NCBI RefSeq assembly: GCF_006345805.1
Contig: NC_043003.1
Span: forward strand, 103,602,001 to 103,666,000
Reading direction: 5' to 3'
Length of the DNA: 64,000 nucleotides
Origin: Octopus sinensis
Taxonomy: Eukaryota
How positions within the stretch are numbered: position 1 is the first letter of the stretch; each line of letters starts with the position of its first letter. The position numbers were made by a program, and so were the translations under genes. Positions 13,489 to 13,575 of the stretch are shown piece after piece. A model generated the notes under the pieces. It was not told where the DNA came from. It saw nothing but the letters and a program-made list of their open reading frames with translations, and searched no databases.

Positions 13489-13575
13489 CTTCCGACACCT
13501 GTTTCGATGATATCACTGATATTATTCCAAATGAATAAAATAGTGTAAAACAATGTAATCTTCTCTTCAGGCAAG
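13489..13575 (-). ncRNA. Minimal type-I hammerhead ribozyme motif, sense to DNAJC25 intron 1
   Basis: cttgc-CTGAAGA-gaagat...atcatc-GAAAC-aggt-GTC-ggaag. Stem I pairs 4/5, stem II 5/6, canonical core, GUC triplet. Confidence 0.65.

What the first reader, a model, noticed from the sequence alone, without database searches (positions are those of the whole stretch)
13489..13575. Hammerhead ribozyme motif in the sense strand of a host-gene intron
Seen: complete CUGAAGA / GAAAC-aggu-GUC core with stem I (4/5) and stem II (5/6), on the same strand as DNAJC25 and about 2.9 kb into intron 1. Known: PLEs carry minimal type-I hammerheads that lack helix III and work best as dimers, and intronic hammerheads occur in other animals. 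Inference: it could cut nascent pre-mRNA between 13494 and 13493. The G-G mismatch in stem I and the non-palindromic loop may have attenuated it.
Basis: partly seen in the sequence, partly recalled or inferred. Interest (0 to 1): 0.7.

Follow-up and report, generated by a model that had tools for sequence, protein, structure and literature searches.

The report
Transposon-derived hammerhead relic in octopus intron
The motif is a real hammerhead-ribozyme sequence, but it belongs to a short mobile element that landed in a (TA)n microsatellite inside intron 1 of the Octopus sinensis DNAJC25 gene, is absent from more distant octopods, and is predicted to cut poorly or not at all.

Summary
On the minus strand, 13576..13488 carries every invariant hammerhead core base. 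Stem I pairs 4/5 and stem II 5/6. The predicted cut lies between 13494 and 13493, 2.9 kb into DNAJC25 intron 1 on the sense strand.

It is not a chance match. A diverged paralog at 17874-17958(+) keeps both core boxes, the long helix II (with compensatory changes) and the 3' tail.

It is the hammerhead of a roughly 235-245 bp retroelement unit flanked by TA/CA microsatellite. The unit is either a Penelope-like-element terminus or a retrozyme-like monomer. Five other hammerhead-type motifs lie in the window, each 37-105 nt upstream of a (TA)n tract, one at the 3' end of a Penelope-like element with RT and GIY-YIG ORFs.

O. vulgaris has the unit (244/245 identical; the one change is C17 to U). 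O. bimaculoides and Argonauta lack it.

Activity is predicted to be weak. Helix III is 1 bp, its palindrome is broken (CAGGUG against CACGUG in the paralog), and an alternative fold 10 kcal/mol more stable sequesters the core. Rfam scores it 17 bits against a threshold of 34.

Verdict: a real motif of a known kind, most likely a neutral passenger.

The parts
13571..13576 (-). Helix I, 5' strand (ACUUGC).
   Evidence: Pairs with 13493..13488 in 5 of 6 positions, with one G.G mismatch.
13564..13570 (-). Catalytic box 1, CUGAAGA (C3-A9).
   Evidence: Direct reading. Aligned to the RF00163 core. Identical in the paralog HH-C.
13506..13563 (-). Helix II domain, 58 nt. It has a basal stem with G10.1-C11.1 (5/6), a 2x2 internal loop, a 5-bp middle stem and a 6-bp distal hairpin.
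   Evidence: The MFE fold keeps this whole domain. The middle stem shows 2 double and 1 single compensatory changes against HH-C.
13502..13505 (-). Catalytic box 2, GAAA (G12 A13 A14 A15.1).
13496..13501 (-). Minimal helix III, C-AGGU-G (1 bp plus a tetraloop). The hexamer CAGGUG is not a palindrome.
   Evidence: The paralog has CACGUG. Self-duplex energy is -1.6 against -10.3 kcal/mol.
13494..13495 (-). U16.1 and C17. The predicted cleavage is 3' of 13494.
   Evidence: C17 is U in O. vulgaris, the only difference in 245 nt.
13488..13493 (-). Helix I, 3' strand (GGAAGU).
13446..13487 (-). 3' tail of the element, ending at the (TA)n tract. AACTCCATTT at 13460..13451 is conserved with HH-C.
   Evidence: Alignment. 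The tail similarity to HH-C has z = 4.1, with 0 of 500 shuffles as good.
13577..13690 (-). 5' part of the inserted unit. The boundary is approximate and the unique sequence starts near 13680.
   Evidence: Bounded by TG/TA microsatellite. It has no significant similarity to the 5' part of HH-C.
13300..13445 (.). TA/CATA microsatellite flanking the 3' end of the unit.
   Evidence: Its length differs between O. sinensis and O. vulgaris.
13691..13795 (.). TA/TG microsatellite flanking the 5' end of the unit.
16496..16745 (-). DNAJC25 exon 1, coding part. The donor GTAAGT starts at 16495.
   Evidence: tblastn of the O. sinensis DNAJC25 protein. Splice site read.
5369..5397 (-). DNAJC25 exon 2, a 29-nt micro-exon that closes intron 1.
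17801..18013 (+). Paralogous unit HH-C. It reads uucuuc-CUGAAGA-[54 nt]-GAAA-CACGUG-UA|gaaugg, is flanked by (TA)n on both sides, and is absent at the orthologous site in O. vulgaris.
   Evidence: CM R1 scores it 26.3 bits, E = 0.006.

Best explanation
The motif is the hammerhead ribozyme of a short retroelement unit of about 235-245 bp, at 13690..13446 on the minus strand. The unit is of the kind mobilised by Penelope-like elements. It is either a heavily 5'-truncated PLE terminus or a retrozyme-like non-autonomous monomer.

Shown:
- The unit sits inside a TA/CA microsatellite in DNAJC25 intron 1.
- It is shared by O. sinensis and O. vulgaris.
- It is not found in O. bimaculoides or Argonauta.

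Inferred:
- In the source elements, the hammerhead presumably served to process element transcripts, working as a dimer through a palindromic helix III.
- This intronic copy is a solitary, mutated relic. Its helix III palindrome is broken, helix I has a G.G mismatch, and a competing fold sequesters the core.
- It therefore most likely cleaves DNAJC25 pre-mRNA negligibly and is a neutral passenger.
For: 1. The core is complete, and by the descriptor test the match is far from chance.
2. Paralog HH-C at 17874-17958(+) shares both core boxes, the helix II architecture and the 3' tail. The hammerhead region scores z = 7.9 and the tail z = 4.1 against shuffles. CM R1 gives E = 0.006. There are 3 base pairs with changes on both sides and 93% of cells paired, against 22-54% when the partners are slid.
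3. Five further hammerhead-type motifs lie in the window, each 37-105 nt upstream of (TA)n on its own strand. One sits at the 3' end of a PLE with RVT_1 and GIY-YIG ORFs at 56488-58781. The relaxed scan finds 4 where 0.48 are expected.
4. The literature fits. PLE hammerheads lie in the pseudo-LTRs, and most genomic copies are solitary and tied to truncated PLEs (PMC4209133). PLEs favour (TA)n targets and carry hammerheads near their 3' ends (PMC8557442). Retrozymes are non-autonomous PLE derivatives, and about 44% overlap introns in Xenopus (bioRxiv 10.64898/2026.07.22.740005).
5. HH-C is present in O. sinensis but not at the same (TA)n in O. vulgaris, which carries other insertions there.
6. 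Lineage restriction: the HH-A unit is 244/245 identical in O. vulgaris, and nothing matches in O. bimaculoides or Argonauta, although intron 1 is fully covered in both.
7. Weak activity is predicted from the energetics: -7.0 kcal/mol for the hammerhead fold against -17.0 for the MFE, and a helix III self-duplex of -1.6 kcal/mol.
Against: - No PLE ORF adjoins the unit, and I could not identify its autonomous partner.
- Only two family members were found in 316 kb of octopod DNA. The family consensus and copy number are therefore unknown, and the covariation rests on one sequence pair.
- The 5' parts of HH-A and HH-C are not detectably homologous.
- A 58-nt helix II is not the 7-8 bp helix II described for PLE min-hammerheads.
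- The Rfam score is half the gathering threshold.
- Nearest-neighbour energies ignore hammerhead tertiary structure and protein assistance, so the predicted inactivity is an inference.
- No empty site could be defined in O. bimaculoides, because the flanks are microsatellite and repeats.
Confidence: 0.8

Rival explanations
1. An active intronic ribozyme. The motif would self-cleave nascent DNAJC25 pre-mRNA between 13494 and 13493 and so affect the gene's output.
For: All invariant core bases and G10.1-C11.1 are intact. The motif is on the sense strand, 2.9 kb into an 11.1-kb intron. The O. vulgaris ortholog keeps an allowed H17 base, U. PLE hammerheads can be protein-assisted (PMC11167929).
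Against: - Helix III is 1 bp with a non-palindromic loop. Amphibian hammerheads with the same 1-bp helix III are poor as monomers (PMC7229834), and PLE min-hammerheads show low activity even as dimers (PMC4209133).
- No same-strand partner copy exists in the gene.
- A competing fold is 10 kcal/mol more stable.
- The element is not present in O. bimaculoides or Argonauta.
- One substitution in 245 nt between the sister species is within the neutral expectation of about 3, and it falls on C17 in a CpG.
Confidence: 0.07
2. A chance match. The AT-rich intron would happen to contain CUGANGA and GAAA with flanking complementarity, and nothing would be a ribozyme.
For: The Rfam score is below threshold (17 against 34 bits, E = 0.09 even in a 131-nt search). 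The fold energy is no better than that of shuffles (z = -0.8 to -0.9). The descriptor was defined after the motif was seen.
Against: The expected count is 0.003-0.02 per window. A paralog conserves exactly the two core boxes and the architecture while the rest has diverged to about 65% identity, with compensatory helix II changes. Hammerhead-type motifs are enriched in the window, 4 found against 0.48 expected.
Confidence: 0.04
3. A discrete SINE-like or retrozyme element with its own life cycle, transcribed and circularised, rather than a truncated end of an autonomous PLE. The intronic copy would be one of its dead monomers.
For: The unit size of 213-245 bp lies within the retrozyme range (PMC7229834; bioRxiv 10.64898/2026.07.22.740005). 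A second short hammerhead element family in the same locus has two paralogs that start at the same ATGTGACC 5' end. The whole 213-bp HH-C unit, including its 5' part, is the indel relative to O. vulgaris.
Against: No tandem copies were seen for HH-A or HH-C. The hammerhead sits in the middle of the unit and not at its ends. The 5' parts of HH-A and HH-C are not homologous. This reading is a refinement of the best explanation and does not contradict it.
Confidence: 0.35

Closest known systems
Minimal hammerheads of Penelope-like elements (Cervera & de la Pena 2014, PMC4209133).
   Same: Type-I topology. Short helix I of 4-6 bp. G10.1-C11.1 pair. Helix III reduced to a short segment that is palindromic in the family (CACGUG in HH-C), implying action as a dimer. 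Mostly solitary genomic copies. Lies near a retroelement 3' end that abuts (TA)n. A PLE with its own min-hammerhead is in the same window.
   Different: Helix II is a 58-nt three-part hairpin and not 7-8 bp with a small loop. There is no unpaired base between A9 and G10.1. The palindrome is broken in this copy. No PLE ORF adjoins it.
Amphibian satellite / non-LTR retrozyme type-I hammerheads, such as newt satellite 2 and axolotl HHR_Amex1 (PMC7229834).
   Same: Helix III is a single base pair capped by a tetraloop, which is weak as a monomer and active as a dimer. The host repeat unit is a few hundred bp, AT-rich and non-coding.
   Different: Those occur in tandem arrays, have a 4-bp helix II and have conserved loop 1-loop 2 contacts. 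This one is a single dispersed copy with a long helix II, and no recognisable tertiary contact could be assessed.
Conserved intronic hammerheads of amniotes, Rfam HH9 and HH10 (from my own knowledge of de la Pena & Garcia-Robles 2010).
   Same: Lies on the sense strand of an intron of a protein-coding gene, so cleavage would sever the pre-mRNA.
   Different: Those are deeply conserved across amniotes and have a stable helix III and tertiary contacts. This one is restricted to the O. sinensis/O. vulgaris lineage, has a 1-bp helix III, and gave no HH9 or HH10 match.

Membership tests
Hammerhead ribozyme, type I | Invariant core: C3 U4 G5 A6 N7 G8 A9, G12 A13 A14, the A15.1-U16.1 pair, and H17 before the cut. 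| tested here: met
   The sequence reads CUGAAGA ... GAAA-C....G-UC| on the minus strand.
Hammerhead ribozyme, type I | Three helices around the core, with helix I open-ended. | tested here: met
   Helix I pairs 5/6. Helix II has 5/6 at the base plus further stems. Helix III has only 1 bp plus a tetraloop.
Hammerhead ribozyme, type I | Reaches the gathering score of Rfam RF00163. | tested here: not met
   17.0 bits against 34. There were no hits at gathering thresholds in the whole window.
Hammerhead ribozyme, type I | Site-specific self-cleavage. | not testable with these tools
   This needs an in vitro transcription and cleavage assay or RNA end mapping.
PLE-associated minimal hammerhead | Palindromic 15.2-16.2 segment or loop 3, allowing a dimeric helix III. 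| tested here: not met
   CAGGUG gives a self-duplex of -1.6 kcal/mol. The paralog HH-C has CACGUG at -10.3, so the feature is met in the family but lost in this copy.
PLE-associated minimal hammerhead | G10.1-C11.1 pair and a short helix I of 4-5 bp. | tested here: met
PLE-associated minimal hammerhead | Helix II of about 7-8 bp with an unpaired base between positions 9 and 10.1. | tested here: not met
   Helix II is a 58-nt composite hairpin, and G10.1 follows A9 directly.
PLE-associated minimal hammerhead | Located in the pseudo-LTR or 3' end of a PLE, or of a truncated PLE. | tested here: inconclusive
   No RT or GIY-YIG ORF lies next to it. It does have the same layout as the PLE 3' end at 59044-59178, with the hammerhead followed by a short tail and then (TA)n.
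Non-LTR retrozyme | Head-to-tail tandem repeats, each with a type-I hammerhead. | tested here: not met
   It is a single unit. No second copy lies on the same strand in the 72-kb gene locus.
Non-LTR retrozyme | Monomer of roughly 170-400 bp, AT-rich and non-coding. | tested here: met
   The unit is about 235-245 bp between microsatellites, and the hammerhead region has about 30% GC.
Non-LTR retrozyme | Expressed as linear and circular monomer RNA. | not testable with these tools
   No RNA data were available.
Conserved intronic hammerheads (HH9/HH10 type) | Orthologous conservation across distant species of the host clade. | tested here: not met
   It is present in O. vulgaris only. It is absent from the O. 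bimaculoides and Argonauta hians DNAJC25 loci.

The most novel reading that the evidence does not exclude
The HH-A/HH-C motifs, and HH-B by its similar architecture, could represent an undescribed cephalopod subclass of type-I hammerheads. Its marks would be a 54-60-nt composite helix II, carried by short elements that target (TA)n and were still mobile after the O. sinensis/O. vulgaris split. On this reading the intronic copy would retain enough activity, protein-assisted or in trans, to cleave DNAJC25 pre-mRNA co-transcriptionally.
Probability: 0.06. Interest if true: 0.6.

Novelty: new member of a known kind. Interest (0 to 1): 0.3.

Why it matters
As found, it matters little for DNAJC25. 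It is one more solitary copy of a retroelement hammerhead, a class already known to be common in metazoan genomes, introns included.

Two side points have some value:
- Octopus genomes carry hammerheads with an unusually long helix II that fall below Rfam thresholds, so standard annotation misses them.
- The (TA)n tracts around DNAJC25 exon 1 are insertion hot spots that differ between O. sinensis and O. vulgaris, which suggests recent retroelement activity.

If the copy did cleave, it would be a lineage-specific case of a ribozyme severing a host pre-mRNA.

Tried and rejected
- Thermodynamic significance: HH-A, HH-C and HH-B fold no better than shuffles (z from -0.1 to -0.9). Stability gives no support either way.
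- Sequence similarity within the window: blastn of the HH-A unit at default sensitivity found nothing. The paralog appeared only with a sensitive scoring scheme.
- I first inferred that exon 2 lay outside the window because no HPD codons were present. This was wrong. Exon 2 is a micro-exon at 5397..5369.
- Homologs of the PLE RT ORF, sought in order to fetch more octopus loci, were about 60% identical proteins from corals, sharks and snails. None was labelled octopus, so I dropped this route.
- A pattern scan of metagenome contigs for the family core gave 0 matches.
- Covariance models R1 and R2 found no further family members in 316 kb, and HH-B is not recognised by them.
- A 50-codon ORF opens at an ATG in helix II of HH-C, as in the Anolis PLE. 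It has no similarity to the window's PLE protein and is not preserved in HH-A, so I treat it as chance.
- Constraint between O. sinensis and O. vulgaris: 1 change in 245 nt against about 3 expected at 0.8-1.5% divergence, Poisson P about 0.16. The species are too close to be informative.
- The sub-threshold Rfam mir-297, mir-3149, mir-1277 and mir-466 hits are microsatellite artefacts.
- The search used the 47-residue exon-1 peptide padded with a GS filler and scored on residues 1-47 only, to get round the tool's length filter.

Full report
**What is there.** On the minus strand, window 13576..13488 reads acuugc-CUGAAGA-(58 nt)-GAAA-CAGGUG-UC|ggaagu. Every invariant hammerhead core base is present: C3-A9, G12-A14, A15.1-U16.1 and C17. 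The predicted scissile bond lies between 13494 and 13493. Stem I pairs 4/5 (5/6 with the next A-U) with a G.G mismatch. Stem II pairs 5/6 at the core and continues into a 5-bp stem and a 6-bp hairpin.

**Is it chance?**
- Allowing any helix III of 1-6 bp raises the expectation to 0.02. Two matches are observed.
- Rfam at gathering thresholds finds nothing in the window.
- With permissive filters, Hammerhead_1 aligns end to end at 17.0 bits against a threshold of 34, with a 54-nt insertion in helix II.
- The fold is no more stable than that of shuffled sequence (z = -0.9).
- The decisive evidence is therefore comparative, not statistical.

**Gene context.**
- The window is 100% identical to Octopus sinensis CM016865.1 (locus L002).
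- I fetched the DNAJC25 loci of O. sinensis, O. vulgaris, O. bimaculoides and Argonauta hians through the exon-1 peptide.
- Exon 1 is on the minus strand and ends at 16496, with GTAAGT at 16495.
- Exon 2 is a 29-nt micro-exon at 5397..5369.
- Intron 1 is 11,098 nt, and the motif starts 2.9 kb into it on the sense strand.

**A family, and a retroelement.**
- A sensitive search found a paralog, HH-C, on the plus strand at 17801-18013, upstream of exon 1.
- HH-C reads uucuuc-CUGAAGA-(54 nt)-GAAA-CACGUG-UA|gaaugg.
- The two copies are about 65% identical overall. They are identical in CCUGAAGAGAAGA and differ by one base (C/G) in UCGAAACA(C/G)GUGU. They also share a 3' tail block, AACTCCATTT.
- Similarity is significant for the hammerhead (z = 7.9) and for the tail (z = 4.1), but not for the 5' parts.
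- A covariance model built from HH-A alone recovers HH-C at E = 0.006.
- On the model alignment, 93% of cells pair, against 22-54% when the partners are slid. Three pairs change on both sides, two of them in the middle stem of helix II. This rests on one sequence pair, so it is suggestive only.
- Both units are bounded on both sides by TA-rich microsatellite.

**Other hammerhead-type motifs in the window.** The window holds four more. Each lies 37-105 nt upstream of a (TA)n tract on its own strand.
- HH-B at 54370..54280(-). It also has a 60-nt helix II, and its helix III hexamer CGAUUG is self-complementary if wobble pairs are allowed.
- A U3-A8 variant with CCGG at 55623..55559(-).
- A classic min-hammerhead at 59044-59081(+), with A6 changed to U. 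It sits at the 3' end of a Penelope-like element whose RVT_1 and GIY-YIG ORFs span 56488-58781.
- A decayed copy at 17041-17078(+).

A relaxed scan finds 4 motifs with intact cores where 0.48 are expected.

This layout matches published descriptions:
- PLE hammerheads lie in the pseudo-LTRs, and most genomic copies are solitary (PMC4209133).
- PLEs prefer (TA)n targets, have hammerheads near their 3' ends and often have inverted truncated neighbours (PMC8557442).
- Retrozymes are non-autonomous PLE derivatives and are common in introns (bioRxiv 10.64898/2026.07.22.740005).

**Orthologs.**
- O. vulgaris has the HH-A unit, 244/245 identical. The one change is C17 to U, in a CpG.
- Clean orthologous blocks differ by 0.8-1.5%, so about 3 changes were expected. 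This is no evidence of constraint.
- O. bimaculoides and Argonauta have exon 1 and all later exons in the fetched loci. Neither has a match to the unit by sensitive blastn or by either covariance model.
- The published O. vulgaris/O. bimaculoides split is 13-33 My (PMC13282606). The insertion therefore most likely post-dates that split, although loss cannot be excluded, because the flanks are repeats.
- HH-C is missing at its (TA)n site in O. vulgaris. That species instead carries 5.4 kb there, including an intact LINE ORF and another hammerhead element. This is consistent with recent, independent insertions.

**How it works.**
- In the source elements, the hammerhead presumably processes element transcripts as a dimer through the palindromic helix III. 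This is inferred from the literature.
- This copy is poorly equipped to do that. Its helix III is 1 bp. Its hexamer self-duplex is -1.6 kcal/mol, against -10.3 for CACGUG.
- The same C-to-G change lets CAGG pair with the CCUG of the core. The best hammerhead-compatible fold is therefore -7.0 kcal/mol against an MFE of -17.0.
- No same-strand partner copy lies in the gene.
- Hammerheads with a 1-bp helix III are weak as monomers (PMC7229834). PLE min-hammerheads are weak even as dimers (PMC4209133). In the one PLE reconstituted in vitro, the hammerhead was not needed for insertion, and no cleaved ends were seen in RNA-seq (PMC11167929).
- I therefore rate meaningful cleavage of DNAJC25 pre-mRNA as unlikely, at about 0.07. 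It cannot be tested here.

**Comparison and verdict.**
- It works like, and most likely derives from, the PLE/retrozyme class of type-I hammerheads.
- It fails several strict membership criteria: the Rfam threshold, the palindrome, the helix II size and tandem arrangement. It passes the core, the topology, G10.1-C11.1 and the genomic setting.
- It is not comparable to the deeply conserved amniote intronic hammerheads.
- It is a real feature, a new member of a known kind, and of modest interest.

Noticed in passing
window 17801-18013 (+): HH-C is a 213-bp hammerhead-bearing unit with an intact core and a perfectly palindromic helix III (CACGUG). It is flanked by (TA)n on both sides, upstream of DNAJC25 exon 1 on the opposite strand. 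It is present in O. sinensis and absent at the orthologous site in O. vulgaris.
   Followed up: yes
window 54280-54370 (-): HH-B is a second long-helix-II hammerhead motif: UUUUAG-CUGAUGA-(60 nt)-GAAA-CGAUUG-UA|CUAAAA. It has a perfect 6-bp helix I and scores 18.4 bits on Rfam Hammerhead_1. It is not related in sequence to HH-A, and it lies 37 nt upstream of (TA)n.
   Followed up: partly
window 55559-55623 (-): A hammerhead variant with the U3-A8 core covariation (UUGAAAA-GGUC...GACC-GAAA-CCGG-UA|C), scoring 19.7 bits on Rfam HH9. It is inverted relative to the PLE immediately downstream, as described for inverted truncated PLE copies.
   Followed up: partly
window 56488-59178 (+): A Penelope-like element with an RVT_1 ORF at 56488-57831 and a GIY-YIG ORF at 57717-58781. 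The frames are split and the N-terminus is interrupted by microsatellite. A min-hammerhead lies at 59044-59081 (UCUUU-CUGUUGAA-GAGCguagGCUC-GAAA-CG-UU|AAAGA, with A6 changed to U), about 100 nt before (TA)n. The closest RT homologs are about 60% identical, from corals, sharks and snails.
   Followed up: partly
window 16970-17189 (+); L002 57724-57945 (+): A discrete short element of about 210 bp with a min-hammerhead. The window copy, just upstream of exon 1, has a decayed core (CCGACAA). A paralog with an intact core sits on the sense strand of the last DNAJC25 intron, outside the window. Both start at the same ATGTGACC and end in (TA)n. In the O. vulgaris ortholog of the intronic copy, a G-to-A change breaks a helix II pair.
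   Followed up: partly
L003 3618-9022 (O. vulgaris): A species-specific 5.4-kb segment at the (TA)n tract upstream of DNAJC25 exon 1. It holds an intact 1001-aa LINE ORF (endonuclease plus RT) on the minus strand, and a further hammerhead element (UUGACAA...GAAA-CCGG-UU|) at 8904-8936 that ends in (TA)n.
   Followed up: partly
window 5369-5397 (-): DNAJC25 exon 2 is a 29-nt micro-exon (LLQTTREATK) with canonical AG/GT borders. tblastn missed it.
   Followed up: yes
window 12888-13368: A multi-copy repeat of about 400 bp directly downstream of the HH-A unit, with about 10 copies at 80-93% identity in each Octopus DNAJC25 locus. A repeat that looks like a tRNA-derived SINE lies at about 18051-18200.
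   Followed up: no
window 62240-62821 (-) and 49081-49572 (+): A Tc1/mariner transposase HTH ORF (HTH_Tnp_Tc3_2, E = 5e-18) and a zf-RVT fragment. These are further transposon remnants.
   Followed up: no
window, many sites (e.g. 13370-13440, 54850-55520, 59170-59710): Sub-threshold Rfam hits to mir-297, mir-3149, mir-1277 and mir-466 all fall on (TA)n/(CA)n microsatellites and are artefacts of low complexity.
   Followed up: yes
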